64,000 bases of DNA from positions 124,001 through 188,000 of IMG/VR virus record IMGVR_UViG_3300031787_007614; one strand, written 5' to 3'. Numbering within the stretch: the stretch's first letter is position 1; every line of letters starts with the position of its first letter. The position numbers were made by a program, and so were the translations under genes. A model generated the notes under the pieces. That model did no database searches and was not told the origin of the DNA. It worked only from the letters and a program-made list of their open reading frames with translations. Positions 8,945 through 41,079 of the stretch are shown one piece after another.

Positions 8945-9974
8945 TACTTGGGCTGGAGTAGGCAAGGTCACTGAACAAACTGGCCCTACTGAAATAGTAC
9001 GGGCTCGAAAAAGCATATCCAGTGCTGTAAATACCGCAGTGGAAATGAATGACACCATTGTCACAGCCCGATCCCGAGCTGAACTTACATTTGATGATGC
9101 TACCAAAGTCAAAATTACTGAACAGTCAAAGCTGATAATTGATGACTTTGTGTATGACCCAAAGTCAGGCACAGGCAAGTTGGCCATGAAAGTGGCTCTG
9201 GGCACGGCTAGATATGCATCAGGACAGATTGCCAAGAACTCTCCACAACAGGTTGCAGTCAGCACACCCACAGCTTCTATTGCTGTGCGTGGCACAGACT
9301 TTTCAATGACCGTGGACGAGCTTGGGCGCAGTCTAATAATGCTGTTGCCCAGTTGTGATGACAAAACATGTGTAACAGGTGCTATTGAAGTATCCAATCA
9401 ATCTGGTAGCATACTAATGACACAGGCCTATCAAGCTACTTTAGTTTCCACAGTAGATACACCGCCAACCAGACCAGTTGTGTTGACCATTGATCAGGCC
9501 AACATCAACAACATGCTGATCATCAGCCGGCCCCGAGAAATTAGCGAAGAACATAGAGACAACAAAAAAGATGTTCGAACAGCGTTAGACGTTAACTTTC
9601 TTGATCGAGACTTTTTAAAACCTGCAGATTTAGACAATCGGTTGGATGCATTCAACCGACTGGATCGCAATGAACTAGAAGATGAGCTGTTGCCCAATGT
9701 GTTGGATGCCGTAAATGCAGCCTTGTCGGCCACGCAAGAAGCCATGTCAACTACACTGAGCATGCTGCCAGGCTATGACGCTGGCTCAGGATTAAAATGG
9801 CGGGTAGATGATCAAGAACAGCTGGGTTTAACCAGATACAGCACTCATATTTTTGAACTAACTGTTCCCAAAGAGCAAGGGGCAATACTGGATCTCCAAC
9901 AGGACGGCATTCCTGTATATCAAAAAATCAACACAGGTGGAACCACCACAATTACCATTGTCCAAAGTCAATAA
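8898..9974 (+). CDS. FecR-domain periplasmic protein
   Basis: Signal peptide; DTIVT, AELTFDDATKVKITEQS, STPTASIAVRGTDF FecR motifs. Confidence 0.88.
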   Translation: MLRAITLISVLFSLTNTWAGVGKVTEQTGPTEIVRARKSISSAVNTAVEMNDTIVTARSRAELTFDDATKVKITEQSKLIIDDFVYDPKSGTGKLAMKVALGTARYASGQIAKNSPQQVAVSTPTASIAVRGTDFSMTVDELGRSLIMLLPSCDDKTCVTGAIEVSNQSGSILMTQAYQATLVSTVDTPPTRPVVLTIDQANINNMLIISRPREISEEHRDNKKDVRTALDVNFLDRDFLKPADLDNRLDAFNRLDRNELEDELLPNVLDAVNAALSATQEAMSTTLSMLPGYDAGSGLKWRVDDQEQLGLTRYSTHIFELTVPKEQGAILDLQQDGIPVYQKINTGGTTTITIVQSQ

Positions 9975-10283: not shown

Positions 10284-10468
10284 TGTTACATCTTGATTAC
10301 AACTGGGACCTGGGCCCTGGATATATTGTGCCAGACAAAGAATTAGACACTGAAAGACTGGGCTGGAAGCCTGGACAGTTCTGGCAGATGATTGAAGTCA
10401 ATGGAAAAATAAGATTACACCAGGTGGATCCCATGGTCCAATTTGTATTGGAAGGATCTGTCAAATGA
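10280..10468 (+). CDS. Hypothetical protein
   Basis: Coupled overlaps with both neighbours. Confidence 0.65.
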   Translation: MMLHLDYNWDLGPGYIVPDKELDTERLGWKPGQFWQMIEVNGKIRLHQVDPMVQFVLEGSVK

Positions 10469-10806
10469 GCGAAGTAGTTGAACTAGTAAACAAATATGGC
10501 TTTCCTATTGTGATGGCTGTGGGCATGGGCTACATCATCAAGTATGTTTGGGAATGGGCCACAAAAGAAGTCAAACCTGTTATCAATGATGCCAACACTG
10601 TGTTGATTGCTCTCATTGACCGCGTTAGAATGTTGGACAATGATCTTATTCGTTTGAATCAAAAGGTCAACACAGTGTTGCACCTACGTGGCAAGATGAT
10701 TGAAAGTGATCGTGTGATGGAAGCACACAAAGTAGATCATGAAGCTGAAAAAACGTTCAAGAGTGTAGTGCAAGATAAAACTACTACCAAGCCAGGCGGA
10801 AGTTAA
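10465..10806 (+). CDS. Small membrane/coiled-coil protein, paralog of 10002..10283
   Basis: LVNKYGFPIVMA; ALIDRVRMLDNDLIR vs ALDNRVKTMNHDVVR. Confidence 0.65.
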   Translation: MSEVVELVNKYGFPIVMAVGMGYIIKYVWEWATKEVKPVINDANTVLIALIDRVRMLDNDLIRLNQKVNTVLHLRGKMIESDRVMEAHKVDHEAEKTFKSVVQDKTTTKPGGS

Positions 10807-11520: not shown

Positions 11521-13569
11521 TTACTTTTCATGGGCAACAAACTCACCGTTCCAGTTGTCGCCTAGGTCCTGTTGCTTCATGAACGCACAACGTTCAATCC
11601 ACATTTTATAGTACTTGTCCATTTGCCCACCAAACTTGCCGTGCAATTCTTCACACAAGATAACAGCCGCATCAAACTGTTTTTCTTTGTATAAGGCATG
11701 CATTTTGTTGTGCGTAGCACGTTCTTTAGTATAATCCTCACCACGAGTGCGTAGCACGGTGTAGATCAAGTCTGCTACTGTTTTGCCTTTGGGTTGTAAG
11801 TTATCTAATAGCAAGTAGAAGAAGTCATCTCGAGTTCTGTTGTATGTCTCAGCACCAACAATGGCCAACACACCATAAGCCTTACAACGTGCTTCTAGTC
11901 GTGCGGCTGTTGACACCATGTCACCCAAGATGTCATAACTGTGTCGTTCTGTTGAACCCATCTCACCAATAAAGCCGACGCCTGTGTTACAGCCCCAACC
12001 CATTGCAGCTGGTGGTAAGCCCTGAGCTTCCATCTCTTTAGTGTAAGCATCTACAGCATCCAACATTTCTAATCCTACTTGAACAATAGTTCTAGCATGG
12101 TTAGGATCTTCAATTGGAGCACCGTGTATGTGCATACTCGCATCACCCACATACTTTATGACCATGCCTTTGTTGTCTAGTATAGGGCGGCTGATGCTGT
12201 CCATGTAGCCGTTCATGTACCGGCCAAGTCCAGCAACATCATCGCCGTAGTGTTCCCCAATTGGTGTAAAACCACGTAAGTCACTGAACATGACACTTAC
12301 GTCTTTACGCACGCCACGCTTGATCAAGTCTGGATCTTTTTGCAGTAGCTCTACAACTTCCTTGGAACAGTAGCCTGCAAATTGTTTTTTGATTGCTTGT
12401 TTTTGGAGGAACTCTGAGACAAACTTGACTCCGTAGGCGTGTAGCCCGACAAGGACAATGCCCGCGACTGGGAGGGTAACGTCAAATAACCAAAGGTAAT
12501 TGACAAAACTAAAGTAACTGCCATACGCAAGTACAGCGCATATTCCAACCAACGAGATAAGACCAACATACACCCACCTTGTAAGAATTAATAATAACAC
12601 GCCTGCTGCCAAGATAACAAGTATTTCAACTCCATCAGCGTAGTCTGGACGCACAATATTGGTGCCTGCTGCCACAGTTTCTAGTACACTGGCTTGCAAG
12701 TAGTGCGGATAGACTTCTCCTCTTGCAGTTGCGACGGGGTTGTTGAGCCCGCGAGCTGTGAGTCCGACAATGACAATTCCACCTTGGAAGTCCTCTGGCA
12801 AATCAGCCAGGGAGTATTCTTGCGGTTGGGATGACCAATCCACCCAAACTCTACCGTAACTGTCTGTTGGAATTTTTCCAAACTGTGGAATTCTAACTGC
12901 TTCAACGCTTCCGTCATTGACTCGGACCTGGAAGCTGGGATCTCCGGCAAGGACTCTAAGCGTTTCAAGACTGATGGAGGGATAGACTTGTTCTCCAACT
13001 GTGACGACTTGGGGGACTCGGCGTACAACGCCGTCGATTTCAGGCAAAGTGTTAACAATGCCAATGCCGCTTGCTGTTTCATTTAATGACCTCACGTTGG
13101 GTTGAATACTTTGATACGCTATGCCCGGCAAACCAGTGCCTATTACAGACACACCAGGTCTGTAAGGTGCGTACTTGGACACAGTGTTTTCGTTGGTGGC
13201 CATGTGTGGCAACACTACTAAACTCTCTTTGAGTTGCCGAGACAGTGCAGAGTCTTGCCCAAAACGATCCACATCGGGCATGAATATGTTAAACACAATC
13301 ACACCTGCATTGCGATCTTCTAACTGACGAATAATGTCAGCATACTGATTTCTGGGAAAAGGAAACTGCCCACGTTGAGCAATAGCACGGTCGTCAATGT
13401 TGACCACATGAATTTGCTCACTTGTTGTAACAGCACGATCAGTGATCAGCATGTCAAAGTAACGTAGTCTTATACTTTCTACAAAGCTAGGATCAGCAAT
13501 TCTTATACTTAAAATAAGTGCCAATGTAATTAGAGCAGTCCATGGACTTAGTAGAATTTTTTTCAACAT
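11521..13569 (-). CDS. CHASE2-domain class III adenylate/guanylate cyclase
   Basis: N-terminal TM, CHASE2 (VVNID, QFPFPR, DGVVRRVP), three TMs, cyclase FSDLRGFT / KYVGDA / GDMVSTAARLE. Confidence 0.93.
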   Translation of the reverse strand: MLKKILLSPWTALITLALILSIRIADPSFVESIRLRYFDMLITDRAVTTSEQIHVVNIDDRAIAQRGQFPFPRNQYADIIRQLEDRNAGVIVFNIFMPDVDRFGQDSALSRQLKESLVVLPHMATNENTVSKYAPYRPGVSVIGTGLPGIAYQSIQPNVRSLNETASGIGIVNTLPEIDGVVRRVPQVVTVGEQVYPSISLETLRVLAGDPSFQVRVNDGSVEAVRIPQFGKIPTDSYGRVWVDWSSQPQEYSLADLPEDFQGGIVIVGLTARGLNNPVATARGEVYPHYLQASVLETVAAGTNIVRPDYADGVEILVILAAGVLLLILTRWVYVGLISLVGICAVLAYGSYFSFVNYLWLFDVTLPVAGIVLVGLHAYGVKFVSEFLQKQAIKKQFAGYCSKEVVELLQKDPDLIKRGVRKDVSVMFSDLRGFTPIGEHYGDDVAGLGRYMNGYMDSISRPILDNKGMVIKYVGDASMHIHGAPIEDPNHARTIVQVGLEMLDAVDAYTKEMEAQGLPPAAMGWGCNTGVGFIGEMGSTERHSYDILGDMVSTAARLEARCKAYGVLAIVGAETYNRTRDDFFYLLLDNLQPKGKTVADLIYTVLRTRGEDYTKERATHNKMHALYKEKQFDAAVILCEELHGKFGGQMDKYYKMWIERCAFMKQQDLGDNWNGEFVAHEK

Positions 13570-13572
13570 CAA

Positions 13573-14083: not shown

Positions 14084-15088
14084 TTACTTAATCTGACTCC
14101 ACACACGCTCGCGAATTTGCTTGGTCAACACATCAGGCAAACTCACATAGTCCAGTTCTTCAGCCATCTTCTTGCCATTCTTGAATGACCAGTTAAAGAA
14201 CTTTAGTACTTCAGCCGATGCTTTTTTATCAGCTGGGTCCTTGTACATGATAATAAAACTAGCAGTGGTCACAGGCCACACTGTGTCGCCCTTTTGGTCC
14301 ACAATACTAATGCCCATACCTGGCACTGAGAACCAGTCAGCGCCTGCAGCCGCGGCAGCAAAAGTCAAGTCATCTGGACTGACAAATTTGCCTGACTTGT
14401 TTTGCAACTGCATGAATGTCATGTTGTTCTTTTTAACATAAGCATACTCAACATATCCAATGGCACCTTTCACACGATTCACATTGGCTGCAACACCTTC
14501 GTTGCCTTTGCCGCCCACTGATGATGCAGCCGGCCATTTTACTGCGGCACCACGGCCCACTCGGCTGGCCCATTCAGGACTGACAGTTGTGAGATAGTCT
14601 GTCCAGTTAAATGTTGTGCCTGATCCATCTGCACGATGCACTACAGTGATGTTGGCATCAGGTAACTTTTTGCCGGGATTCAACGCCGCTAATTTTGGGT
14701 CGTTCCACTTCACAATGTTGCCCATAAACACTTCTGCCATCACTGCACCTGTGATTTGCAATTCACCGGGGCGGAATCCTTCCAAGTTGATCACCGGCAC
14801 TGTGCCACCAATAACAGCAGGAAATTGCACTTGTCCTAGTCGATCCAAATCTTCACCTTTTACTGGTGCATCAGTTGCACCAAAGGCCACTGTTTTGTTG
14901 TTGATCTGGCGAATGCCGCCTGATGAACCAATTGATTGATAATTAAGTCCCACGCCAGTTTCTTTCTTGTAGGCTTCAGCCCATTTAGCGTAGATAGGAT
15001 AAGGGAAAGTTGCACCTGCCCCTGTGATGTCGGCTGCTTGTGCTGTAACCGTGAAAGCGGTCAGTAGTGTCAGTAAGTGTTTGAACAT
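14084..15088 (-). CDS. pstS: Phosphate ABC transporter substrate-binding protein
   Basis: ITGAGATFPYP, YQSIGSSGG, HRADGSGTT, GKGNEGVA; AAAGGAG SD. Confidence 0.97.
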   Translation of the reverse strand: MFKHLLTLLTAFTVTAQAADITGAGATFPYPIYAKWAEAYKKETGVGLNYQSIGSSGGIRQINNKTVAFGATDAPVKGEDLDRLGQVQFPAVIGGTVPVINLEGFRPGELQITGAVMAEVFMGNIVKWNDPKLAALNPGKKLPDANITVVHRADGSGTTFNWTDYLTTVSPEWASRVGRGAAVKWPAASSVGGKGNEGVAANVNRVKGAIGYVEYAYVKKNNMTFMQLQNKSGKFVSPDDLTFAAAAAGADWFSVPGMGISIVDQKGDTVWPVTTASFIIMYKDPADKKASAEVLKFFNWSFKNGKKMAEELDYVSLPDVLTKQIRERVWSQIK

Positions 15089-15129
15089 GATTTCTCCTTT
15101 GTAGTTCACAACTATTTAGGCCGAATCAC

Positions 15130-15147
15130 ATTACAATTTTGTTACAA
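15130..15147 (-). promoter_or_regulatory. Pho-box-like direct repeat TTGTAAC-AAAA-TTGTAAT
   Basis: 11-bp periodicity and A-rich spacer as in the PhoB consensus CTGTCAT-A(A/T)A(A/T)-CTGT(C/A)A(C/T); directly upstream of pstS. Confidence 0.55.
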
Positions 15148-15432
15148 TGTCAACATTCGGATCAACGCAATGGTGTCAATAGTCGTGAGCAACACATAGT
15201 TAGCCAACATCCCAAAACTTCTGCGAGTCCAAGCAGCCCAGGCATAGATAGCACAACCAGTGATCCACACAGGGTAAAGAGCCAGTAAGGGTGGAGTTGG
15301 TACAGTGGCTGCCATTGCAACACTGCAACCAATGCTGATAGCCCAAGCCAATACTTCCATGACAAACCTAAAAGGGTGGGTCTTGTAATCACTTTTGATC
15401 CATTCAAAGATGCCAGTTAAAATGTTGTTCAT
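15142..15432 (-). CDS. Small inner-membrane protein
   Basis: Three hydrophobic segments; ATGA overlap with the uvsE stop. Confidence 0.75.
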   Translation of the reverse strand: MNNILTGIFEWIKSDYKTHPFRFVMEVLAWAISIGCSVAMAATVPTPPLLALYPVWITGCAIYAWAAWTRRSFGMLANYVLLTTIDTIALIRMLTL

Positions 15433-16466
15433 CGAGTGGCCAGCCATTGCTGGTACAATTGATCTCGGGCCAAGTTCTTGCCTTTGGCCTCGCACTGAAT
15501 GTTGAATTGATCAGCAAATGTCAAGGCCCAGTCATTCACTGCTTCGTTCCAATAAAAGTCACTATGGGCTCGCAGTTTTTGCTTTTTGTAGCCCTGTGCC
15601 AACAGCGCACTCAAGTCAGGCTTTACTGTGCGAGAGTGGTCAACAAGGCAGTCTTCACGACTAACTGAGTAGTGTAGTGTAGGACGCACACCACGCCAAG
15701 ACTCACGAACCCGTTGCGCACGTGGGTCCGTAGGTTGGATGTATTCGCCGGTGTTGATCCAGTGGTGATGGATATCCAGCACAAGAGCCACATGATCAGC
15801 CACGGCAAGAGTAACGTCAAGTCCATTTGTAAGTTCGTCATTTTCTATAGTTATGAGATTGCGAGCCTCTGGAGACAATCTGCCCAAGGTTCGAAGAAAC
15901 TTTGCAGGGCCGCCCTTGCCCGAGAGATGTACGTTGATCTTGAATCCGTGATCATGATACGTGTTTCCATACCCCATCCACCGGGCCATATCTGCATGAT
16001 ACTCGAATTCCAGAATGGATCGTTCAACGATTTCATCCGATTCGCTTGCCAGCACACAAAATTGTCCTGGATGAAAGGAAAGCCGAACACCCAGACGCCG
16101 AGCAGCGTTGCCAACCGGCGCAAATATGCGTTCGCAATGATCTTGAATTTCACGTCGTTGCCACCAATTGATCCAAGAGGGTTCTGTATAGCCCTGTAAC
16201 ATTTCTGATCCCAAACGAACCATTCTGCGCTCGGGTTCCATTGCGCCCACACGCTCAATCATTTTTAACGCCGCGGCAGCGTTATGGTTCATGATGTCCC
16301 ACTGACGCTGGTCAGCTTCGGCGGCATGCTCACGGAGCCAGCGCATGGTGGTTGATCTTCCGTTTATATCACGGTCCACAGCATTGACTTTCATGCCCCC
16401 AGTTTCCTCGGGGTCATTGAGCCATTTGCAACAAAAGCCAAAACGCGAATGTGTAAGTGTAGTCAT
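15429..16466 (-). CDS. uvsE: UV-damage endonuclease
   Basis: RLSFHPGQF, INVH, TIENDE, VLDIHHH, RAHSD, QCEAK. Confidence 0.93.
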   Translation of the reverse strand: MTTLTHSRFGFCCKWLNDPEETGGMKVNAVDRDINGRSTTMRWLREHAAEADQRQWDIMNHNAAAALKMIERVGAMEPERRMVRLGSEMLQGYTEPSWINWWQRREIQDHCERIFAPVGNAARRLGVRLSFHPGQFCVLASESDEIVERSILEFEYHADMARWMGYGNTYHDHGFKINVHLSGKGGPAKFLRTLGRLSPEARNLITIENDELTNGLDVTLAVADHVALVLDIHHHWINTGEYIQPTDPRAQRVRESWRGVRPTLHYSVSREDCLVDHSRTVKPDLSALLAQGYKKQKLRAHSDFYWNEAVNDWALTFADQFNIQCEAKGKNLARDQLYQQWLATR

Positions 16467-18829: not shown

Positions 18830-20063
18830 GTCTAGTGTTACCGTAATGCACCACTTCAACGTTGTCTGTAGATTCCAACTTGCGCCATGGGTCAACAATT
18901 ATACTGCCAGGCAAAATGTCACAGTAGGGTTTGGTGTCAGCTTGATCGCCGGTGTACTCATATGTGATCTTGCGATTGTGTGCCCACAAAAAGATTGCAG
19001 GTGTATCAACACCATCTACCACTTTGTCTTTGTTGTCAGCAAGTGGATCAACATACACAACTGATTTACCTTCCATCTCAACGTAGTGCCCAACCAAGGT
19101 TGAGTATGAACCAATACAGTATTCTACGTCAGGCTTGTAGGCCTTGCCGTGAATCACAATGGGCATGTTGTCATTCATCACACTTAAATCAACCAAGAAC
19201 ATGGCCAAGTTCTTAGCTTGAATTTCTCTAGCATGCATCACAGTATCAAACAAGTCATACCCAATGTTGTATTCTTTGGCCAACCAACGCAGTGCAATGT
19301 TATCACGTGGATGGCAAGCACCGGCATCTCCCATGCCTGCTGTCATGTACTTGGGTCCCATGATACGCATGGTTGAACGTGCAAGAGCATTTGTGACAAC
19401 GTCTACATTGATATTGCCAATTCGCATGGCAAAGTCTTGGACCATGTTTACAAGGCCCACTTTGGCCGAAATAAATGTGTTGTAAAAAATCTTAATGGCT
19501 TCGCATTCGTCCCAGGTACCAATTTCGTAGCGTGGGTCATTTTGCATCACTGTGTCATACAAATCACGAAGTTCACCGGCCAAGGCATTGGGGTTGCCAT
19601 CTTCAGTACCAATCATGATCATTTCAGGGTTCACCATGTCCCACTTTACCGAGCCCATGGCAATCAGGTAAGGATTGTACAAGAACTGATGCTTGGCATC
19701 CAACAACGGAACAAAGTGCTTGCGAGTAGTGCCAGGTAGCACTGTAGAGATCAACACAACCTTCTTGGAGCCAGTCGCGTATTTGTTAACATTTTTAATA
19801 GCATCAATCACAGCCGCATGCCCAAAATCTCGAGGTTCCATGTGTGAGCTTGGCACTGATCCATCATAGCCTTCAGCATGTGGTGTAGGCACAGCAATAA
19901 AAATCCATTCGCTTTCGTTTACTAGTTCTTCAATGTCGCAGACTTTTACTGAGTCACTGACTCTTGGGTAAATATCGTAACCGCGCACTTCGTGCTTTTC
20001 TGCCATGACTTCTGCGCAGTCAAGTCCTAGTTTCCCAATACCAATAAAACCAATTTTCTTCAT
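18822..20063 (-). CDS. ugd: UDP-glucose/GDP-mannose 6-dehydrogenase
   Basis: GFIGIGKLG, IAVPTP, STVLPG, catalytic GACHPRD, GKAYK; AAAGGA SD before MKKIG. Confidence 0.92.
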   Translation of the reverse strand: MKKIGFIGIGKLGLDCAEVMAEKHEVRGYDIYPRVSDSVKVCDIEELVNESEWIFIAVPTPHAEGYDGSVPSSHMEPRDFGHAAVIDAIKNVNKYATGSKKVVLISTVLPGTTRKHFVPLLDAKHQFLYNPYLIAMGSVKWDMVNPEMIMIGTEDGNPNALAGELRDLYDTVMQNDPRYEIGTWDECEAIKIFYNTFISAKVGLVNMVQDFAMRIGNINVDVVTNALARSTMRIMGPKYMTAGMGDAGACHPRDNIALRWLAKEYNIGYDLFDTVMHAREIQAKNLAMFLVDLSVMNDNMPIVIHGKAYKPDVEYCIGSYSTLVGHYVEMEGKSVVYVDPLADNKDKVVDGVDTPAIFLWAHNRKITYEYTGDQADTKPYCDILPGSIIVDPWRKLESTDNVEVVHYGNTRHA

Positions 20064-21399
20064 GAGTGTTCCTTTAGATAGATTATACAATTTTTTGCAA
20101 AGCCTTTGCAACCGAGATATCATAATTTATCGCTGGACGCCACATGGCTCAAGAAATTTAGGCGATCTGACGCCAATAAAAACTATACAATATCAGACAG
20201 ATGTATTATTAACTATCCCCCCAATAATCTGTCATGATCAAGAGCCGTTAAATTACAACTATTGGACTCAACATGATTTTGTACAAAATTCAACATTGAT
20301 TCTTGAAGAGTCAACTATTGTTGCTAACCAGTTTGCCCACTGGCATTTACGTTCAGCTTTACGCCGAAGACACAAAGCACATGTTTTTAAAAATACCTTA
20401 TTATGTCATTCAGAACTTAACAGCAAAGAACTAGACAAATACACACAAAATAACTTCACCGGAGTTTACTACTGGGCACATGGATTGATTGCTAGAGATT
20501 GGTTTAGATTTGCGCAACTAGATCATAGTCTAAAACAAAAAAATATTCAGTCTGATTTTTTGATTTACAACAGAGCATGGTGCGGCACTAGAGAGTATCG
20601 GTTAAAGTTTGCAGAACTTTTGGTAAAAAACAATTTACATCATCACTGTCAGATGGGATTCAATGACACTGATAGCATTCACTACAGTAACCACAAGTTT
20701 AACAATCCTGCCATGCAAATTTCTAGCACAGATCTTGACCAAAACTTCAAAAAAAATAATTCATTGCCAACAGCCAGTGCAGATTATTGCACTCAGGATT
20801 ATCAGCAAACAGCAATTGAAGTTGTGTTAGAAACGCTGTTTGACGACAGTAGATTGCATCTCACTGAGAAGGCTCTACGTCCAATTGCTTGTGGGCAACC
20901 TTTTATATTGGCAGCAACTGCCGGTAGCCTTGGATATCTTAGAAGCTACGGGTTCAAAACATTTGACTCAGTGTTTGACGAATCGTATGATACCATCAGC
21001 GATCCAGTAGAGCGGCTTCATGCTATAGTCGATCTTATGAACAATATCAAAAACAATCCAAGACGTTTGGAAATATATCAACAGTTACAAGATATCGCCG
21101 ACTTCAATCAACAACGATTCTTTAGTGATGAGTTTCATCAACAAATCGTAGACGAATTTAAACAAAATTTTTCTAATGCGTATGTAGAAGTGTTAAACAG
21201 TTGTACTGGAGAATACATGGAACAATACTTAAATGCCGTACAACAAACTCAAGAATATTATACTGCACCAGTATCAAACAATCATCTTCAAAATCTTAGA
21301 AACTGGACAAAATACGTCTATGATTTTATAGATCGGACAACGAGCGAGTCAAACATCCGTTCCAATCTTCCGGCGGCGGAGTGTGTTCATAATCAGTGA
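20062..21399 (+). CDS. Putative glycosyltransferase-like protein
   Basis: VVLET..HLTEKALRPIACGQPF..GFKTF..FDESYD; start uncertain. Confidence 0.5.
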   Translation: MSVPLDRLYNFLQSLCNRDIIIYRWTPHGSRNLGDLTPIKTIQYQTDVLLTIPPIICHDQEPLNYNYWTQHDFVQNSTLILEESTIVANQFAHWHLRSALRRRHKAHVFKNTLLCHSELNSKELDKYTQNNFTGVYYWAHGLIARDWFRFAQLDHSLKQKNIQSDFLIYNRAWCGTREYRLKFAELLVKNNLHHHCQMGFNDTDSIHYSNHKFNNPAMQISSTDLDQNFKKNNSLPTASADYCTQDYQQTAIEVVLETLFDDSRLHLTEKALRPIACGQPFILAATAGSLGYLRSYGFKTFDSVFDESYDTISDPVERLHAIVDLMNNIKNNPRRLEIYQQLQDIADFNQQRFFSDEFHQQIVDEFKQNFSNAYVEVLNSCTGEYMEQYLNAVQQTQEYYTAPVSNNHLQNLRNWTKYVYDFIDRTTSESNIRSNLPAAECVHNQ

Positions 21400-21685
21400 C
21401 TCTGGCCTGCAGATTGTCGTAGAAACTGTCTAATTCTCCATTCCATCGACCGCGCAGGCCTTTGATTGCACTGTTACAATATTCCCAATTGCGGCCTCGA
21501 TAGGCCTGCATCAAGTCACTGTGTACTTTTTTGTAGGCGTCTAGGGTTGGAAAATCTCCCAAGGGAATATTTTCTACCACACACCAAGCAGTTTCTTGCT
21601 TGTTGCCATCTTCAAATGTATCTAGTTCTAGTATGGTAAACTTTTCGGGAATTAGATGAAGTGAGTCTCCAAATATAATGTGCAT
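21326..21685 (-). CDS. Stand-alone homolog of the cyclase C-terminal region
   Basis: HSDLMQAYRGRNW..LRGRWNGELDSFY..R..WNG aligns with HNKMHALYKEKQF..LHGKFGGQMDKYY..R..WNG of 11521..13569. Confidence 0.75.
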   Translation of the reverse strand: MHIIFGDSLHLIPEKFTILELDTFEDGNKQETAWCVVENIPLGDFPTLDAYKKVHSDLMQAYRGRNWEYCNSAIKGLRGRWNGELDSFYDNLQARVTDYEHTPPPEDWNGCLTRSLSDL

Positions 21686-21709
21686 GTTAAATCCTTTTAA
21701 ATATGTATC

Positions 21710-22498
21710 ATGAAAGTTGCTTTTGACCTAATTTCTGATCTCCACATTGACACCTGGAACGAACCCTTTGACTGGACTGATCGAGCCACCAGTCCATACG
21801 CTATTGTTGCCGGTGACATTGCTGAAGATAGAAAATTGTTATCTGACGCATTGACCAATCTAAGTCGCTGTTATCAAGCTGTGTTTTTTATAGACGGCAA
21901 TGACGAGCATGCTAGATATTATCACAGTCTTAGCGACAGCTACAAAGACCTAACCAAACGCATTGCCAAAATATCTAATGTGGTTTATCTCCAGGACAAT
22001 GTGGTGGTAGTTGATGGTATTGGCATATTGGGCACCAATGGATGGTGGGGATTTGATTTTGAACTCAGCATTGATCCTACTCAAAGTTCTTTGTGGTGGC
22101 AAGAAAAAGAAAATCTCACCAGTGACATTGCTAAAAAGATATCCAGGATGGCTACCAATGATGCGGCGTACATGATAAACTCTGTGAAACGCTTGCAATC
22201 ACACAAGGATGTCAAACACATACTCATGGTCACACATACTGTGCCCTGTCAGCAGTTGATTGAGCATGACATAGATCTTGAAGGCAGCATGCGATTCAAC
22301 ATGATGGGCAACAGAGACATGATGCAGGCTATGGCAGCAGACGACGGGAAAAAGATTCATACCTGGTGTTTTGGACACTATCATGGATCAGTAGACCAAA
22401 TACGCCACGACGTGAGGTTTGTAAACAACTGTCGTGGGCGCAGTGGTTCGCCATGGTCACATCATGTGTACCATCCTCGCAGAATTGAAATTCAGTGA
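21710..22498 (+). CDS. Calcineurin-like metallophosphoesterase
   Basis: ISDLH, AGDI, GNDEH, HTVP, GHYH; TAAATA 6 nt before ATG. Confidence 0.9.
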   Translation: MKVAFDLISDLHIDTWNEPFDWTDRATSPYAIVAGDIAEDRKLLSDALTNLSRCYQAVFFIDGNDEHARYYHSLSDSYKDLTKRIAKISNVVYLQDNVVVVDGIGILGTNGWWGFDFELSIDPTQSSLWWQEKENLTSDIAKKISRMATNDAAYMINSVKRLQSHKDVKHILMVTHTVPCQQLIEHDIDLEGSMRFNMMGNRDMMQAMAADDGKKIHTWCFGHYHGSVDQIRHDVRFVNNCRGRSGSPWSHHVYHPRRIEIQ

Positions 22499-22803
22499 AC
22501 TTCTTCTGGTTCTAATTTGATTTGTAACGGATAACTTTGTGAACGAGCTTGCAAGGTAACTTCGATGCCTTTTTGTTCGGCAATCTCATAAGGTAGCACA
22601 GCAACCACAGCACTTCCAGCTTCGTGAATGTCAACTGTGATTTGTTCAGCAGATTCTGCGGTGTAATCAAAATACTCAACCAAACTACTGACCACAAATT
22701 CCATAGAGGTCTGATTGTCATTGATATAAATCACGCGAAACAACGACGGTGGTCGCACTGCTTCTTGTGTGCGAGTTCGTGATTTCGTTTCAGTTTGAGC
22801 CAT
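22492..22803 (-). CDS. clpS: ATP-dependent Clp protease adaptor
   Basis: RVIYINDNQTSMEFVV, VDIHEAGSAVV, YPLQIKLE. Confidence 0.93.
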   Translation of the reverse strand: MAQTETKSRTRTQEAVRPPSLFRVIYINDNQTSMEFVVSSLVEYFDYTAESAEQITVDIHEAGSAVVAVLPYEIAEQKGIEVTLQARSQSYPLQIKLEPEEVH

Positions 22804-22819
22804 TTTTTATCCTTGTTAG

Positions 22820-22850
22820 CAGTGGCAGCACTGTGCTGCCACTGTATTTA
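22820..22850 (-). promoter_or_regulatory. TAAATA immediately followed by an 11-bp perfect hairpin
   Basis: TAAATA at 22850-22845; CAGTGGCAGCA/TGCTGCCACTG at 22820-22844. Confidence 0.65.
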
Positions 22851-22860
22851 CACAATTATA

Positions 22861-23319
22861 TTAGTTTGTGTAGGTGATCGCAATAGTCTTTGGCTTGGCA
22901 TCTTCGGGCACTTCACGTTTCAAGTGAACGCTTAGAATACCAAGTTCAAGGTGTGCATTACTGATCTCCACATGATCAGCCAACTGAAATTCCCTACGGA
23001 AACTTCTTTCGCTGATGCCTTTGTGCAAATATTTTGTTGTAGTATCCTCATTCTCCACAGTCTCACGACTGTGCTTACCTTCAACAATCAAGAATTTTTT
23101 GTCCTTGGTTACTGTGAGGTTATCATGCCCAAAGCCAGCCACGGCCATGCTGATCATGTACTCATCTTCATTGATTTGTACAATGTCATAGGGTGGGTAG
23201 TTGGTAGAGGATTGTTGAGCACTCACACGCATGAGTTCATCAAACATGCTATCGAAACCGATACCAAATTTGGTGAGTGTGGGAATGTCGAAACTACGAA
23301 GGGTGAGAGTTTTTGTCAT
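22861..23319 (-). CDS. Small heat-shock protein (Hsp20/IbpA-like)
   Basis: NYPPYDI, AVAGF, YLHKGISERSFRREF, A.L..GILSV. Confidence 0.95.
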   Translation of the reverse strand: MTKTLTLRSFDIPTLTKFGIGFDSMFDELMRVSAQQSSTNYPPYDIVQINEDEYMISMAVAGFGHDNLTVTKDKKFLIVEGKHSRETVENEDTTTKYLHKGISERSFRREFQLADHVEISNAHLELGILSVHLKREVPEDAKPKTIAITYTN

Positions 23320-23326
23320 TTGTTTT

Positions 23327-23394
23327 CTCCTTTATATAAGCAAGATGACTTGTAATGTAGCCCCACTATGGGCACTACAACATTATTTATTATA
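23327..23394 (-). promoter_or_regulatory. hsp20 leader: promoter motifs, hairpin and ROSE-like thermometer
   Basis: Overlapping TATAAT/TAAATA at 23394-23384; TGTAG/CTACA hairpin; CTTGCTT-ATATA-AAGGAG. Confidence 0.65.
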
Positions 23395-23406
23395 CACGAA
23401 GAAAAA

Positions 23407-23634
23407 CTATATTTTATTATTTAGGTCAGTTATCAAGCGGTAACTTGTCCATTCTGGATGTTCTGGATGTGGCACCCAGGTCATTGCAAACAGTGTGTAA
23501 GATTCGTCTGAATCAAATGTAACCCGCAAGGTGTATTTGAATACTTTAGTACGGTATTTGATATTGTATTTTGCTGCCCATGCACTCAGTTTGTTTCGAA
23601 CAAAGTCTGAGGACAACCGAAACTCAATGTACAT
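23407..23634 (-). CDS. Hypothetical protein
   Basis: ORF coupled to rpsU. Confidence 0.7.
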   Translation of the reverse strand: MYIEFRLSSDFVRNKLSAWAAKYNIKYRTKVFKYTLRVTFDSDESYTLFAMTWVPHPEHPEWTSYRLITDLNNKI

Positions 23635-23858
23635 CAGTACAGTTTTTTAGGTAGTGCTTGCTCGGCTAGTTGTTTGCGCCAGCGATTTTTGGCAGCACTG
23701 CGTTTGAGTTTGCGAGCAGTAGTGGGCTTGATGTAGTGCTCTTTTTCACGGAGATCATTGAGTATGTTTGACGCTTGAATTTTTTTCTTGAGTTTTCTCA
23801 GCGCACGTTCAATATTGTTGTCCTGAACCAACACTGATCTACCATGTAATTTACCCAT
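23634..23858 (-). CDS. rpsU: Ribosomal protein bS21
   Basis: IERALRKLKKK, LREKEHYIKPTTARKLKR, C-terminal LY as in E. coli S21. Confidence 0.9.
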   Translation of the reverse strand: MGKLHGRSVLVQDNNIERALRKLKKKIQASNILNDLREKEHYIKPTTARKLKRSAAKNRWRKQLAEQALPKKLY

Positions 23859-25056
23859 TGACTTTCTTTAACTCCTCGGGAGTATTTACCATGTTTTCGT
23901 CAATTTCTACATGGGCGATGTTTTGTTTAGTATACTCGCCTAGCTTGTACATGTGTGGCAGTAGCACACGTTCCAGTTCACTGTGTAGTCCACGAGCACC
24001 AGTTTTGTTCTTGATGGTATTGTCGGCAATTTTGACCAGGGCCTCTGGGGTAAAATCCAACACAATCTTGTCTTGGTCAAACAGCCATTTGTACTGTTCT
24101 ATATAACTGTGTTTGATATCAATCAATATCCTAATGAGATCATCTCTAGTTAAATCTTGCAATGCTACCCAGGTTGGGAAACGACCAACAAATTCTGGAA
24201 TCATACCAAAGCGAATCAAATCGTCAGGTGTGACTTGGTCTAGGTGCGTGGTGGTATCCGAGTTTACTTTGGCACCAAACCCTATGCTGGTTCCACGCAC
24301 TCGACTTTTTACAATGTTATCCAGGCCCACAAATGCGCCGCCTGCAATGAACAGGATATTGGTGGTGTCAATTTCAACTGTTTCACCTGATGGATGTTTG
24401 CGCCCACCTTGTGGAACAATTCTACACTTGGTTCCTTCGACTAGCTTGAGCAGAGCCTGTTGTACACCTTCACCTGATACATCTCTTGTGATGGATGCTG
24501 ATTCCGAACGACGAGAAATTTTATCAACTTCATCTAAAAACACAATGCCACGTTGGCATCGATCAACGTCATTACCAGCAGCCGCAAACAGTCTACTAAT
24601 CAAACTTTCCACATCATCGCCAACATAGCCTGCTTCAGTAAGACTGGTGGCGTCAGCAATCACAAACGGCACGTCAAGATATCGTGCTACCGATCTTGCC
24701 AACAGAGTTTTTCCCGAACCAGTGGGCCCAAGCATGAGAATGTTGACTTTTTCAATTTCGGTATGTTTGTCATGATTGTTGATGCGTTTGTAATGATTGG
24801 CAATTGCCACGCTCAACACAATCTTGGCTTGATCCTGACCAATTACGTATTGATCAAGATGTGTTTTGATCTCAATTGGATTCAATGTAGGGGATGTTTT
24901 TGTTTCTTTAACTATTAGTTCTTCTTTGAGAAGAGTTTCACATAAATCCACACATTCATTGCAAATTGCAACACCTTCGCCCACAATTAGTTTGGCCACT
25001 GCGTCTTTATGTTTGTTACAAAAACTGCAGGTGTCAATGGTTTCAGTCTGTTTCAT
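23851..25056 (-). CDS. clpX: Clp protease ATPase subunit
   Basis: Zn finger CSFC..CNEC, GPTGSGKT, GYVG, LDEVDK, RDVSGEGVQ, IGF loop. Confidence 0.97.
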   Translation of the reverse strand: MKQTETIDTCSFCNKHKDAVAKLIVGEGVAICNECVDLCETLLKEELIVKETKTSPTLNPIEIKTHLDQYVIGQDQAKIVLSVAIANHYKRINNHDKHTEIEKVNILMLGPTGSGKTLLARSVARYLDVPFVIADATSLTEAGYVGDDVESLISRLFAAAGNDVDRCQRGIVFLDEVDKISRRSESASITRDVSGEGVQQALLKLVEGTKCRIVPQGGRKHPSGETVEIDTTNILFIAGGAFVGLDNIVKSRVRGTSIGFGAKVNSDTTTHLDQVTPDDLIRFGMIPEFVGRFPTWVALQDLTRDDLIRILIDIKHSYIEQYKWLFDQDKIVLDFTPEALVKIADNTIKNKTGARGLHSELERVLLPHMYKLGEYTKQNIAHVEIDENMVNTPEELKKVNG

Positions 25057-27790: not shown

Positions 27791-28215
27791 TAGCGATACT
27801 CCCGATCTAGTTTAACACTGGTCAATCCAGCAACCATTTGAAATTTGTCCCAGGCATCTTTCACTGCCGGGCGAGATTCAAGTTCACTGTCCGGCAATAC
27901 TGTTTCCAACCAGTATTCTGATCGGCGGCTTGGATGTGTGCCAAACTTGCGTGGCTGGTGTAGTCGACCAGTTTCCCAAAGTTCAATGCTAACACTGCGG
28001 AACTTGTCTTCATCTTCTTTACTGTTGAAATCATAGGCACTCCATTCTGCTCGGCTGCCGCCACCATAGCAGTATCCCGCCCAGATGCCTGCCCACTGTT
28101 CGTCATCTCTGGGATCAAAATCTGTACGAGTAATCAGCACCAACACATCGTCCATGTTCACACTACCTTCCACAATGTCTCGAACGCAACGGCTGTAACT
28201 GAGTCCAATTTTCAT
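27790..28215 (-). CDS. Hypothetical protein
   Basis: ORF track; coupled operon. Confidence 0.8.
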   Translation of the reverse strand: MKIGLSYSRCVRDIVEGSVNMDDVLVLITRTDFDPRDDEQWAGIWAGYCYGGGSRAEWSAYDFNSKEDEDKFRSVSIELWETGRLHQPRKFGTHPSRRSEYWLETVLPDSELESRPAVKDAWDKFQMVAGLTSVKLDREYR

Positions 28216-29585
28216 ACTTTTTCACCTGCTTCAAAGTCACGGAATCTCAAGAACCGGGGGAATCGGAGACTGTATGTTCCGTCTTGGTTTTGGGTGACTG
28301 CGTCCGCTTGGACTTCAACCAAGTGACCAAGTAGCTGATCCCTACTGGCCCAATACTCATCGCGAAGAGTATCACTAAACCCACTACCAACATTAACATG
28401 AATTCTACGGTCATTATCATCTCCTTCACAGATTATAGCACCCAACCGGTTTTCGTTCCTACCAGTTCCTTCTTCAAAACCCACAATGTTCAAATCAACT
28501 GTGATGGTGGGTTTCCATTTCATCCACGAGTCCGAACGTTTGCATTGGTATGGTGCGTCCAGGCTCTTGATCATGATGCCTTCAAAGCCACCTTCCACAG
28601 CAGCTTCCGCATAACGTTGCATGATGTCATGTCCTTCGGCTGTGTCCAGGTTCACATCCAAGCCTGGCATGATGCGCAGACACGTAGTCTCTTCCAATCC
28701 AGCGCGGGCTGACTCTAGCCATTCCAGACGTTTGTACTGCCCTGCATTCCAGTGCCCTTCTTGAAAAGCTTCAAGTGGGATGATATCAAAGATGTGATAC
28801 ACCATGCCGGTGGTTTCGGCGTTTGATTTGCGATGTGCTTGGCGCATGAGTTGCTGGAAACTTTCGCCCACAATCTCACCATCCAACACATAATGGCCAC
28901 CGGTACCACGTCCATATTGGAAGTGCTTGCGAGCATCTTCAATGGCATCGGCAACCTGCGGAAAGTTTTCAAATTCTTTGCCATTGCGACTGTATAGTGT
29001 GACTGTGGATCCACTAACCACTGCCAACACACGCACACCATCCAGTTTGCATTCCAGGCGCTTGATGCCTTTCATTTTCTTGGGATGATCTGTTGAGTCT
29101 TGTGCCAGCTGGCACGAGAAAATTGGTATCTTGTATTCGGTCTTGCCCACAACCTTGTTGATGGTCTTTTCTGAAATGCCGCATCGAAGGTCTTTGATCA
29201 ACACACGGCGGGCTAACATGTTCCATTCTTCCGAGTCAAACTGCTGGCTCATTTGTTCAACTGCTTCTCTAGCACGATTGCCTGTGATGTACCTAGTGCG
29301 TAGAGCTTCTAGCATGGCCCAGAACTGTGTCCAAGGATTGGCACGACCAGTCAGTCCCTCAGTCTCAGGCACCTGGCGGATGCCAAACACATAGAACGGA
29401 TTGTAGGCTTGGTAGCAATTGAACAAAAAACACTGTGCATCGGCACTGCCAAGCCGAGCAGCCATGAGAGCCTTTTCAATCACTTTTTCTTTGTGAATGC
29501 GACTGTCAGAGCTTTCTAGGTCTCGGATCCATCCTGCGGCCATTATGGCATCAAACCTTGAGTAGCTGTAATCGGTTTCATTCAT
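28212..29585 (-). CDS. lig: ATP-dependent DNA ligase
   Basis: KLDGVR (motif I), VLDGEI, FDII, EGIMIK, WMKWK, OB fold SLRFPRF. Confidence 0.95.
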   Translation of the reverse strand: MNETDYSYSRFDAIMAAGWIRDLESSDSRIHKEKVIEKALMAARLGSADAQCFLFNCYQAYNPFYVFGIRQVPETEGLTGRANPWTQFWAMLEALRTRYITGNRAREAVEQMSQQFDSEEWNMLARRVLIKDLRCGISEKTINKVVGKTEYKIPIFSCQLAQDSTDHPKKMKGIKRLECKLDGVRVLAVVSGSTVTLYSRNGKEFENFPQVADAIEDARKHFQYGRGTGGHYVLDGEIVGESFQQLMRQAHRKSNAETTGMVYHIFDIIPLEAFQEGHWNAGQYKRLEWLESARAGLEETTCLRIMPGLDVNLDTAEGHDIMQRYAEAAVEGGFEGIMIKSLDAPYQCKRSDSWMKWKPTITVDLNIVGFEEGTGRNENRLGAIICEGDDNDRRIHVNVGSGFSDTLRDEYWASRDQLLGHLVEVQADAVTQNQDGTYSLRFPRFLRFRDFEAGEKV

Positions 29586-41076: not shown

Positions 41077-41079
41077 TTT

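What the first reader, a model, noticed from the sequence alone, without database searches (positions are those of the whole stretch)
21326..22498. Orphan copy of the cyclase C-terminus divergently paired with a metallophosphoesterase
Seen: the 119-aa protein aligns with the last roughly 120 aa of the CHASE2 cyclase (H..M..Y, L.G.[FW].G..D.[FY]Y, R, WNG) but lacks the metal-binding and substrate-binding cyclase motifs. It shares a 24-bp intergenic region with a calcineurin-like phosphoesterase, the fold used by CpdA-type cAMP phosphodiesterases. Inference: writer, eraser and a pseudo-cyclase regulator could form a complete phage cyclic-nucleotide circuit.
Basis: partly seen in the sequence, partly recalled or inferred. 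Interest (0 to 1): 0.78.

Follow-up and report, generated by a model that had tools for sequence, protein, structure and literature searches.

The report
Stand-alone cyclase tail in jumbo phage
A freshwater jumbo phage carries a small, well-conserved protein that is a free-standing, catalytically empty copy of the tail end of bacterial cAMP/cGMP-making enzymes. It sits next to a phosphodiesterase that looks like a carrier-protein hydrolase rather than a cAMP eraser, so the proposed complete phage cyclic-nucleotide circuit is not supported.

Summary
The 119-aa ORF (21326..21685, -) is homologous to the last ~110 residues of the phage's CHASE2 cyclase. The family HMM hits only itself and the cyclase C-terminus in the 364-kb genome (E 9.5e-11). 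hhalign gives E 1.4e-10, and Foldseek hits are almost all cyclase C-termini. The protein corresponds to the last beta-alpha-beta-beta of the catalytic domain plus a three-helix tail, and it starts just after the last catalytic helix. It is not a recent duplicate or a relic: about 750 clusters at 50% identity, dN/dS about 0.18, AF2 pLDDT 94.

Three of five near-complete relatives keep the orphan and the phosphoesterase but have no cyclase. Melnitz and HTVC008M have the cyclase but no orphan. The genome has no cNMP-binding domain. The phosphoesterase is closest to M. tuberculosis PptH (Z 23.2, against 14.8 for the cAMP phosphodiesterase Rv0805) and to SPbeta YotB.

The orphan-phosphoesterase head-to-head pair is nevertheless fixed in 79 of 80 loci, with a 24-bp spacer holding an 18-nt near-invariant sequence. 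In more distant phages the orphan has other neighbours.

Function is unknown. My best guess is a non-catalytic mimic of the cyclase tail that acts by protein binding.

The parts
21326..21685 (-). Orphan: a 119-aa stand-alone homologue of the class III cyclase C-terminal module. It comprises beta 2-5, alpha 6-11, beta 17-26, beta 29-37, and helices 42-63, 67-77 and 86-101. It has no catalytic residues.
   Evidence: ORF. Family of 109 clusters at 90% identity and about 750 at 50%. HMM and hhalign matches to the cyclase. AF2 pLDDT 94.1. Foldseek AFDB and BFVD hits are cyclase C-termini. dN/dS about 0.18.
21686..21709 (.). 24-bp divergent spacer. Read on the orphan strand it is GATACATATTTAAAAGGATTTAAC. 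The first 18 nt are nearly invariant across relatives, and AAGGA lies 7 nt before the orphan ATG.
   Evidence: Sequence. Spacer length and 18-nt conservation across about 45 distinct related loci whose proteins are only 42-60% identical. The motif is unique in the window.
21710..22498 (+). 262-aa metallophosphoesterase, PptH/YotB-like, with an intact dimetal site and a GNDEH variant of the GNH[DE] motif.
   Evidence: phrog_1649 2e-26. Pfam Metallophos_2 hit below cutoff. Conserved ligands. AF2 pLDDT 92.9. PptH 6unc: Foldseek E 7e-11, VIA Z 23.2 over 238 aa. YotB and PptH top the Swiss-Prot models.
11521..13572 (-). 683-aa CHASE2 + class III cyclase, the full-length relative of the orphan. It lies 7.7 kb away.
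   Evidence: Pfam CHASE2 1.6e-37 and Guanylate_cyc 8e-15. It is the only PF00211 hit in the genome. Aligned to solved CHDs through residue ~608.
11539..11862 (-). C-terminal module of the cyclase (residues ~571-679), the part homologous to the orphan.
   Evidence: Hit by the orphan-family HMM at E 9.5e-11. hhalign. Joint alignment.
22492..22803 (-). ClpS. It is the conserved neighbour on the far side of the MPE, convergent with it and overlapping by 7 nt. The ClpX-S21-HSP20-ClpS block accompanies the orphan even in distant phages.
   Evidence: Pfam ClpS 1.3e-22. Synteny in 79 of 80 loci and in distant contigs.

Best explanation
What it is (shown). ORF 21326..21685 encodes a compact, well-folded protein that is an ancient, selectively maintained, free-standing copy of the C-terminal module of class III nucleotide cyclases. 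That module is the last beta-alpha-beta-beta of the catalytic domain plus a three-helix, weakly TPR-like tail ending in the ..PPxxW(D/N)G motif. In bacteria this module was found only at the very end of long CHASE2-type and other sensor cyclases. As a separate gene it was found only on phage contigs. It begins right after the last catalytic helix, so it can neither bind metal or substrate nor make a cyclic nucleotide.

It is a near-core gene of a large clade of uncultured aquatic jumbo and T4-like phages. It is kept whether or not the phage has a cyclase. In this clade it is locked start-to-start with a PptH/YotB-like metallophosphoesterase across a 24-bp spacer.

How it works (inferred, not shown). 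It most likely acts through protein-protein contacts as a mimic of the cyclase tail. It would occupy the surface or partner that the tail normally engages on a cyclase homology domain, either the host's CHASE2-type cyclases or the phage's own cyclase where present. That would uncouple or damp host cyclic-nucleotide signalling during infection.

The adjacent phosphoesterase is probably co-regulated with the orphan. Its substrate is more likely a phosphodiester such as a protein-linked phosphopantetheine than 3',5'-cAMP.
For: Homology and fold: sequence; structure; mapping onto solved cyclase domains.

Not a relic: 109 clusters at 90% and about 750 at 50% identity; 356 IMG/VR loci; dN/dS about 0.18; pLDDT 94.

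Independence from the phage cyclase.

The module is common at the C-terminus of bacterial cyclases and never stand-alone in those searched: (54 of 200 other Bacteroidota genomes).

The helical half gives only weak TPR-like matches, and TPR-like folds are a protein-binding kind.

Fixed pairing with the MPE.

MPE nearest to PptH and YotB.
Against: No interaction was tested, and no complex could be modelled.

The role of the tail in full-length cyclases is itself unknown, and no solved structure contains it.

The host is unknown. The only hint is two contigs binned in a Haliscomenobacter MAG, and that MAG showed no cyclase with this tail at E <= 0.01.

The strict pairing with the MPE could equally mean that the MPE is the partner.

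Four metatranscriptomes gave RNA contigs over the MPE, ClpS and HSP20 but none over the orphan body. This is contig-level data and says nothing about absence.

The PptH resemblance is structural only (17% identity; profile against PDB E 0.7), and metallophosphoesterases are notoriously promiscuous.
Confidence: 0.35

Rival explanations
1. The CHASE2 cyclase (writer), the MPE (a cAMP/cGMP phosphodiesterase, eraser) and the orphan (pseudo-cyclase regulator) form one phage-encoded cyclic-nucleotide circuit.
For: All three genes are present within 11 kb in this genome and in G001. In a marine lineage the orphan lies 1.2 kb from a CHASE2 cyclase. The orphan is truly cyclase-derived. Some MPEs, such as CpdA and Rv0805, are cNMP phosphodiesterases, and they share the fold.
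Against: Three of five near-complete genomes keep the orphan and the MPE without any cyclase. Cyclase-bearing Melnitz and HTVC008M lack both the orphan and a close MPE homologue. The MPE is far closer to PptH and YotB than to CpdA or Rv0805 and hits no CpdA/Icc model. The genome has no cNMP_binding domain. In Melnitz, HTVC008M and here, the cyclase's conserved companion is the curli csgFG-FecR cluster, not this pair.
Confidence: 0.1
2. The orphan is an accessory subunit of the adjacent PptH-like phosphoesterase, for example a targeting subunit, an activator or an inhibitor. It would have been recruited from a cyclase fragment and have nothing more to do with cyclases. The two genes would be co-regulated from the shared 24-bp control region.
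For: The head-to-head pair occurs in 79 of 80 loci, always with a 23-25-bp spacer and an 18-nt near-invariant core, while the genes beyond the orphan vary through insertions of up to 8 kb. The same pair occurs in a more distant lineage where the MPE is 43% and the orphan 29% identical to the window's proteins. Both genes are under purifying selection.
Against: More distant family members sit next to other genes, with no MPE within the 6-kb flanks held. These genes are DexA-like, IMPDH-like, CsgF and a cyclase. The features conserved in orphans are the same ones conserved in cyclase tails, with no obvious new surface. Clade-level synteny alone could explain the pairing.
Confidence: 0.2
3. Counter-defence reading. 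The orphan poisons or sequesters a host defence cyclase (Pycsar-type cyclases use the same catalytic fold), or it soaks up its nucleotide signal. The MPE degrades that signal.
For: The phage cyclase domain is related to PycC models, so the fold family overlaps. Phage nucleotide sponges and signal-degrading enzymes are known kinds (my own knowledge, not tested here). The invariant H55, E84, D86, R95 and W108 could form a pocket, but this was not checked in 3D.
Against: The orphan and the MPE hit no PADLOC model. The tail module was found on CHASE2-type sensor cyclases, not on Pycsar cyclases. No ligand site is evident. The MPE's nearest relatives are not cNMP enzymes.
Confidence: 0.07
4. The orphan is a non-functional remnant of a truncated cyclase gene.
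For: It corresponds exactly to the 3' end of a cyclase gene. No RNA contig covers it in four metatranscriptomes.
Against: There are hundreds of diverged intact copies with 13 invariant residues. dN/dS is about 0.18. A conserved Shine-Dalgarno sequence lies 7 nt upstream. The fold is predicted confidently.
Confidence: 0.02

Closest known systems
C-terminal end of bacterial class III (CHD, PF00211) adenylate/guanylate cyclases, especially CHASE2-type sensor cyclases
   Same: The sequence motifs are shared: ELD, H..L...Y...W, L.G.(F/W).GE(L/M)D.(F/Y)Y, R, PPxxW(D/N)G. The predicted fold over ~110 residues is also shared.
   Different: The orphan has no CHASE2 sensor or membrane part and none of the catalytic residues. 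It lacks the AVKGK phosphate-binding loop and the terminal (A/M)(T/E)(S/T)K motif. It is a separate gene, a form seen only on phage contigs.
PptH (Rv2795c), phosphopantetheinyl hydrolase of M. tuberculosis (PDB 6unc; PMC8557913)
   Same: It is the best structural match of the neighbouring MPE by a wide margin: Z 23.2, 238 aa at 2.9 A, TM 0.7. Both are dimetal metallophosphoesterases.
   Different: Identity is only about 17%, and there is no significant sequence-profile match. The substrate is untested. The paper reports PptH as limited to mycobacteria. The phage encodes an ACP-like carrier elsewhere but no PPTase.
YotB of Bacillus prophage SPbeta (uncharacterised)
   Same: It is the top Swiss-Prot structural match of the MPE (TM 0.67/0.64, E 1.2e-10), and it is also phage-borne.
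   Different: Its function is unknown and no cyclase-tail neighbour is known. The orphan family has no hit in cultured-phage records.
CpdA / Icc / Rv0805 class III cNMP phosphodiesterases
   Same: Same calcineurin-like superfamily fold and same metal ligands.
   Different: These are clearly more distant than PptH (Z 14.8; TM 0.48-0.51). No CpdA/Icc model is hit.
Other phage metallophosphoesterases: mycobacteriophage A10ZJ24 Gp48 (damages host DNA; PMC12287305) and D29 Gp66 (2',3'-cNMP phosphodiesterase; cited in PMC10580990)
   Same: They are phage-encoded MPEs with host-directed roles, and they show that the fold does not imply cAMP hydrolysis.
   Different: No specific sequence relation to them was tested or seen here.

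Membership tests
Class III nucleotide cyclase catalytic domain (PF00211) - orphan | Two metal-binding Asp residues (beta1 and the beta2-beta3 turn) | tested here: not met
   The orphan aligns only from cyclase residue ~571 onward, after both Asp residues (FSDLRGFT, YVGD).
Class III nucleotide cyclase catalytic domain (PF00211) - orphan | Substrate-specifying Lys/Asp pair and transition-state Asn/Arg in alpha4 | tested here: not met
   The orphan's Met1 lies 7-8 residues after the alpha4 motif GDxVNxAxRLE. There is no Pfam hit at E <= 1.
Class III nucleotide cyclase catalytic domain (PF00211) - orphan | Homology to the terminal beta-alpha-beta-beta of the domain | tested here: met
   The orphan's N-terminal strands (about residues 4-40) align to cyclase 571-608. 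Those cyclase residues align to CyaB 3r5g 153-192. AF2 predicts beta-alpha-beta-beta.
Cyclase C-terminal tail module (no database name) | Profile-level and fold-level match over the whole ~110-aa module | tested here: met
   HMM E 9.5e-11 (own cyclase) and 2.6e-14 (Melnitz). hhalign E 1.4e-10. Foldseek E 2e-6 to 1e-2 and TM 0.63-0.76 to many cyclase C-termini. Matches in 54 of 200 other Bacteroidota genomes.
Calcineurin-like metallophosphoesterase superfamily - neighbour | Metal ligands of motifs D-x-H, G-D, G-N-x-x, H, G-H-x-H and the four-layer sandwich fold | tested here: met
   D10, H12, D36, N64, H176, H223 and H225 are conserved in 48 sequences. phrog_1649 2e-26. 129 PDB matches at E <= 0.001; those listed are MPEs. 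The Pfam hit alone is below cutoff. The GNH[DE] histidine is Asp (GNDEH).
CpdA/Icc 3',5'-cNMP phosphodiesterase - neighbour | Family-model match, or closest structural kinship to CpdA/Rv0805 | tested here: not met
   No CpdA/Icc model in NCBIfam or Pfam at E <= 1. Rv0805 Z 14.8 against PptH 23.2. CpdA TM 0.48-0.51.
CpdA/Icc 3',5'-cNMP phosphodiesterase - neighbour | Hydrolysis of cAMP/cGMP | not testable with these tools
   This needs an enzyme assay.
PptH-type phosphopantetheinyl hydrolase - neighbour | Structural kinship standing above other MPEs | tested here: met
   6unc_A Z 23.2, against a next-best 16.4. Foldseek E 7e-11, TM 0.71.
PptH-type phosphopantetheinyl hydrolase - neighbour | Sequence-family membership and removal of Ppt from holo-carrier proteins | tested here: inconclusive
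   Identity is 17%. The profile against PDB hits 6unc only at E 0.7 over residues 8-69. Activity was not tested.
Complete cyclic-nucleotide signalling module (writer + eraser + reader) | Co-occurrence of the parts across genomes, and a cNMP reader | tested here: not met
   Three of five near-complete genomes lack the cyclase. There is no PF00027 in the genome. Other reader families were not searched.

The most novel reading that the evidence does not exclude
The stand-alone cyclase tail is a phage weapon against host nucleotide signalling. It would either poison cyclase-fold enzymes, including defence cyclases, by heterodimerising or capping them, or act as a sponge for their product. It would work together with the adjacent PptH-like phosphodiesterase as a two-gene counter-signalling cassette that is near-core in a very abundant clade of freshwater and marine jumbo phages.
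Probability: 0.08. Interest if true: 0.85.

Novelty: new variant of a known kind. Interest (0 to 1): 0.48.

Why it matters
The work defines an unnamed but widespread module at the end of bacterial sensor cyclases. It shows that a large group of abundant, uncultured aquatic phages has turned that module into a separate, strongly conserved gene.

If the protein binds cyclases, it would be a simple natural tool for switching off cyclic-nucleotide signalling, and a first clue to what the cyclase tail does. No solved structure covers that tail.

The neighbour also extends PptH-like phosphodiesterases, which the paper I read reports as limited to mycobacteria, to phages at the level of fold. This raises the testable idea that phages strip phosphopantetheine from host carrier proteins.

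As it stands the function is unknown, and the attractive 'complete circuit' story does not hold.

Tried and rejected
- BLASTP of the orphan against the cyclase gave no significant hit. The similarity needs a profile or an ungapped score.
- Pfam, PHROGs, NCBIfam and PADLOC returned nothing for the orphan.
- tblastn of the orphan and of a distant family member against 50,697 phage records found no stand-alone copy. The only hit (E 2) was the Melnitz cyclase end.
- A PDB sequence-profile search, Foldseek PDB and VIA wide found no solved structure with the module, only weak TPR-like helix matches (Z <= 6.2).
- The T4 late-promoter idea for the spacer was dropped. TATAAATA is not enriched in the window (1 site, 1.7 expected) and the spacer motif is unique. 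The sigma-70-type scan was not above background.
- A leaderless MPE mRNA is unlikely, because an RNA contig starts 31 nt upstream of the ATG.
- The genome-contig scan found only phage contigs binned in one MAG.
- Literature searches for Melnitz or HTVC008M cyclase function, or for this family, found nothing relevant.
- The first dN/dS script timed out and was redone. dS is saturated, so the ratio is only indicative.
- One mistyped reference.
Full report
CONTEXT. The window is bases 124001-188000 of a 364,404-bp IMG/VR virus record. The record has direct terminal repeats and is rated 100% complete, so this is a jumbo phage. Near-identical DNA occurs in many lake and freshwater metagenomes. The nearest cultured relatives for individual genes are the myoviruses Melnitz (host OM43 Methylophilales) and HTVC008M (host Pelagibacter).

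Around the finding lies a block of host-like genes. Going rightward: ClpS (22492..22803), HSP20 (22861..23319), ribosomal protein S21 (23634..23858) and ClpX (23851..25056). Going leftward: an unassigned 464-aa ORF, UDP-glucose dehydrogenase, UvdE, a PstS-like protein, the CHASE2 cyclase, a fatty-acid desaturase and a curli-type CsgF/CsgG/FecR cluster.

The 119-aa ORF (21326..21685, -) and the 262-aa ORF (21710..22498, +) face each other across exactly 24 bp. BLASTP of the 119-aa protein against the 683-aa cyclase reports nothing significant (E 1.2). Orphan 52-110 against cyclase 618-676 gives 11/59 identities and a BLOSUM62 score of 59. In 300 shuffles the score is 29.3 +/- 3.4, with a maximum of 43.

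Profiles settle the matter.
- An HMM built from 68 family members, scanned over all six frames of the 364-kb genome, finds only the gene itself (3e-56) and window 11539..11862 (-). That region is the last ~108 codons of the cyclase (E 9.5e-11).
- hhalign of a broader 140-sequence profile against the cyclase gives probability 96.9 and E 1.4e-10 over cyclase residues 571-679.
- The same profile hits the C-terminus of the Melnitz cyclase (E 2.6e-14) and nothing else credible in that genome.
- Conversely, the cyclase used as query picks up the orphan genes of other phages (E 2e-6 to 9e-4 per genome).

WHAT PART OF A CYCLASE IT IS. Alignment of the cyclase to solved catalytic domains (P. aeruginosa CyaB 3r5g, Synechocystis Cya2 2w01) runs through cyclase residue ~608. 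Cyclase residues 568-608 are therefore the last strands of the catalytic domain, and residues ~612-683 form a tail that no solved structure contains.

A joint alignment of 15 orphans with 8 phage cyclase ends shows that the orphan's Met1 sits 7-8 residues after the alpha4 motif GDxVNxAxRLE. It also shows the shared positions: ELD, H, Y, W/F, L.G.(F/W).GE(L/M)D.(F/Y)Y, R and PPxxW(D/N)G. Orphans have lost the AVKGK loop and the terminal ATSK-type motif of the cyclases. All catalytic residues lie upstream of the orphan's start.

AlphaFold2 with the 140-sequence alignment gives pLDDT 94.1 and pTM 0.86. The topology is beta-alpha-beta-beta plus three helices.
- In AlphaFold DB clusters, Foldseek first finds the protein's own family. 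After that almost every hit is the extreme C-terminal ~110 residues of a cyclase (CHASE2-, response-regulator-, Cya1-type), at E 2e-6 to 1e-2 and TM 0.63-0.76.
- The viral library gives two ~100-aa proteins of uncultured phages and the end of a 671-aa phage CHASE2 protein.
- ESM Atlas gave the same picture.
- The PDB has nothing comparable: Foldseek best E 0.7, and VIA wide Z <= 6.2, where only the helices match and resemble TPR hairpins.

A REAL, OLD GENE FAMILY RESTRICTED TO PHAGE CONTIGS.
- There are 109 clusters at 90% identity.
- There are about 750 representatives at 50% identity with E <= 1e-3. The best 150 are all 79-144 aa.
- There are 356 loci in IMG/VR.
- Thirteen positions are invariant among 68 sequences that are 40-84% identical to the window's protein.
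- Median pairwise dN/dS is about 0.18, against 0.13 for the neighbouring MPE. dS is saturated, so these values are only indicative.
- No copy exists in 50,697 deposited phage records.

I sampled 200 other genomes of the phylum Bacteroidota. The phylum was chosen because one MAG, named Haliscomenobacter, carries two contigs of this phage clade. The profile hits 54 of the 200. With one weak exception, every hit lies inside an open frame of 671-937 aa. The two I read through lie at its very end, for example ...NPPPDDWNGVFVMTTK*. In the genomes searched, therefore, the module is a normal end-piece of bacterial sensor cyclases, and the free-standing form is a phage feature.

THE PAIRING WITH THE PHOSPHOESTERASE IS TIGHT IN THIS CLADE. 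In 79 of 80 related IMG/VR loci the MPE lies head-to-head with the orphan. The one exception has only 104 bases upstream. The spacer is 23-25 bp. Its first 18 nt on the orphan strand, GATACATATTTAAAAGGA, are almost invariant even though the two proteins fall to 42-60% identity. AAGGA lies 7 nt before the orphan ATG and is a plausible ribosome-binding site. The MPE has none, so the A/T-rich remainder may serve its initiation; this is inference. The motif occurs only once in the window.

Beyond the orphan, synteny is loose, with insertions of up to 8 kb before the next conserved gene. The pair persists in a more distant lineage where the MPE is 43% identical to the window's. Still more distant family members (~100-113 aa, 29-41% identical) have no MPE beside them. 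They follow a DexA-like exonuclease or an IMPDH-like gene, precede CsgF-CsgG, or lie 1.2 kb from a CHASE2 cyclase. They usually still sit near ClpS and HSP20.

THE CIRCUIT IDEA FAILS ITS OWN TEST. There are five near-complete genomes with the orphan-MPE pair. Only this one and G001 (97% complete) encode a cyclase. G002 (99%), G003 (95%) and G004 (92%) do not. Melnitz has a full-length cyclase with the tail but no orphan. HTVC008M has a tail-less cyclase and no orphan. Neither has a close MPE homologue. The genome encodes a single cyclase domain and no cNMP_binding domain. In Melnitz, HTVC008M and here, the cyclase's steady companion is the curli-type cluster.

THE PHOSPHOESTERASE. It is a genuine dimetal MPE. 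The ligands D10, H12, D36, N64, H176, H223 and H225 are conserved, and the GNH[DE] motif is the GNDEH variant. It matches phrog_1649 at 2e-26. It is divergent: Pfam hits are below cutoff, TIGR03729 is below cutoff, and there is no PDB sequence hit.

Its AF2 model (pLDDT 92.9) matches M. tuberculosis PptH (6unc) far better than anything else.
- Foldseek gives E 7e-11 and TM 0.71.
- VIA-align gives Z 23.2 over 238 residues at 2.9 A. The next best are Mre11 at 16.4, MPPED2 at 16.0, and Rv0805 and GpdQ at 14.8.
- Among Swiss-Prot models the top hits are SPbeta prophage YotB (TM 0.67) and PptH (0.68). CpdA proteins score 0.48-0.51.

PptH removes phosphopantetheine from holo-carrier proteins and has broad carrier specificity (PMC8557913). 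The phage encodes a 92-aa ACP-like protein with a DSLS motif next to a second desaturase about 40 kb away, and it has no PPTase. This is a lead, not evidence. Other phage MPEs damage host DNA (PMC12287305) or hydrolyse 2',3'-cNMPs (cited in PMC10580990), so the fold says little about substrate.

EXPRESSION. Four metatranscriptomes hold low-depth contigs over parts of the MPE, ClpS and HSP20 and none over the orphan body. Contigs show presence only, and DNA carry-over cannot be excluded.

MECHANISM. What is shown: the orphan cannot catalyse anything a cyclase does, it is a stable small domain under selection, it does not depend on a phage cyclase, and its conserved residues are those of cyclase tails.

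What is inferred: it most likely works by binding, as a mimic of the tail, to a cyclase domain or to whatever the tail contacts, probably in the host. The stand-alone form is phage-specific, while the fused form is common in bacteria of at least one plausible host phylum. I put about 0.35 on this.

The main rival, at about 0.2, is that it has become a subunit or regulator of the adjacent PptH-like enzyme. A sponge or anti-defence role is possible but has no direct support (about 0.07).

VERDICT. The result is a new, unnamed phage protein family derived from a known enzyme's end-piece, next to a PptH-like phosphodiesterase. It is moderately interesting and its function is open.

Noticed in passing
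window 7057-9974 (+): A curli-type secretion cluster lies in the phage: CsgF (7057-7497), CsgG (7494-8321), a 208-aa ORF and a FecR-domain protein (8886-9974). It sits about 1.5 kb from the cyclase. In Melnitz and HTVC008M the cyclase directly follows the same cluster.
   Followed up: partly
window 11521-13572 (-), cyclase residues ~550-560: The cyclase and all 120 close homologues read GDMVSTAARLE, with Ser where class III cyclases have the transition-state Asn. Melnitz has the same change (GDSVSTAARIE). Other phage cyclases of the clade keep Asn. The activity or specificity of this 'writer' is therefore uncertain.
   Followed up: partly
window 20005-21399 (+): A 464-aa ORF has no family in Pfam, PHROGs, NCBIfam or PADLOC. 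It is conserved next to UDP-glucose dehydrogenase in most relatives. Its 3' end overlaps the orphan's 3' end by 74 nt, and the two genes are convergent.
   Followed up: no
window 22492-25056 (-): A host-like block of ClpS, HSP20, a 75-aa ORF, ribosomal protein S21 and ClpX is conserved across the clade and beyond. Distant relatives add ClpP and HSP70 (L094).
   Followed up: partly
L112 (G000:C1:102750-105953), outside the window: A 92-aa ACP-like carrier protein (PP-binding 24.5 bits, DSLS motif) has its start overlapping the end of a second fatty-acid desaturase-like gene (249 aa). The genome has no ACPS-type PPTase.
   Followed up: partly
L111, L113 (G011 contigs C110 and C31): Two different contigs carrying the HSP20-ClpS-MPE-orphan block are binned in a 6.9-Mb Haliscomenobacter (Bacteroidota) MAG. 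This is either a host hint or a binning artefact.
   Followed up: partly
window 10465-10806 (+): A 113-aa ORF with a predicted membrane helix is homologous by eye to Melnitz gene 98. In Melnitz that gene lies just upstream of CsgF. Here it lies between FecR and the desaturase.
   Followed up: no
window 14084-16466, 28212-29585, 38764-43277: Other annotated genes: a PstS-like phosphate-binding protein, the UV endonuclease UvdE, an ATP-dependent DNA ligase, the ribonucleotide reductase large subunit with an ATP-cone, and a pectate-lyase-like protein (a possible tail or depolymerase protein). There is no tRNA in the window.
   Followed up: no
window 21679-22064 and 22289-22495: Metatranscriptome contigs cover parts of the MPE. 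One starts 31 nt upstream of its ATG, inside the orphan's first codons. None covers the orphan body. Depth is very low.
   Followed up: partly
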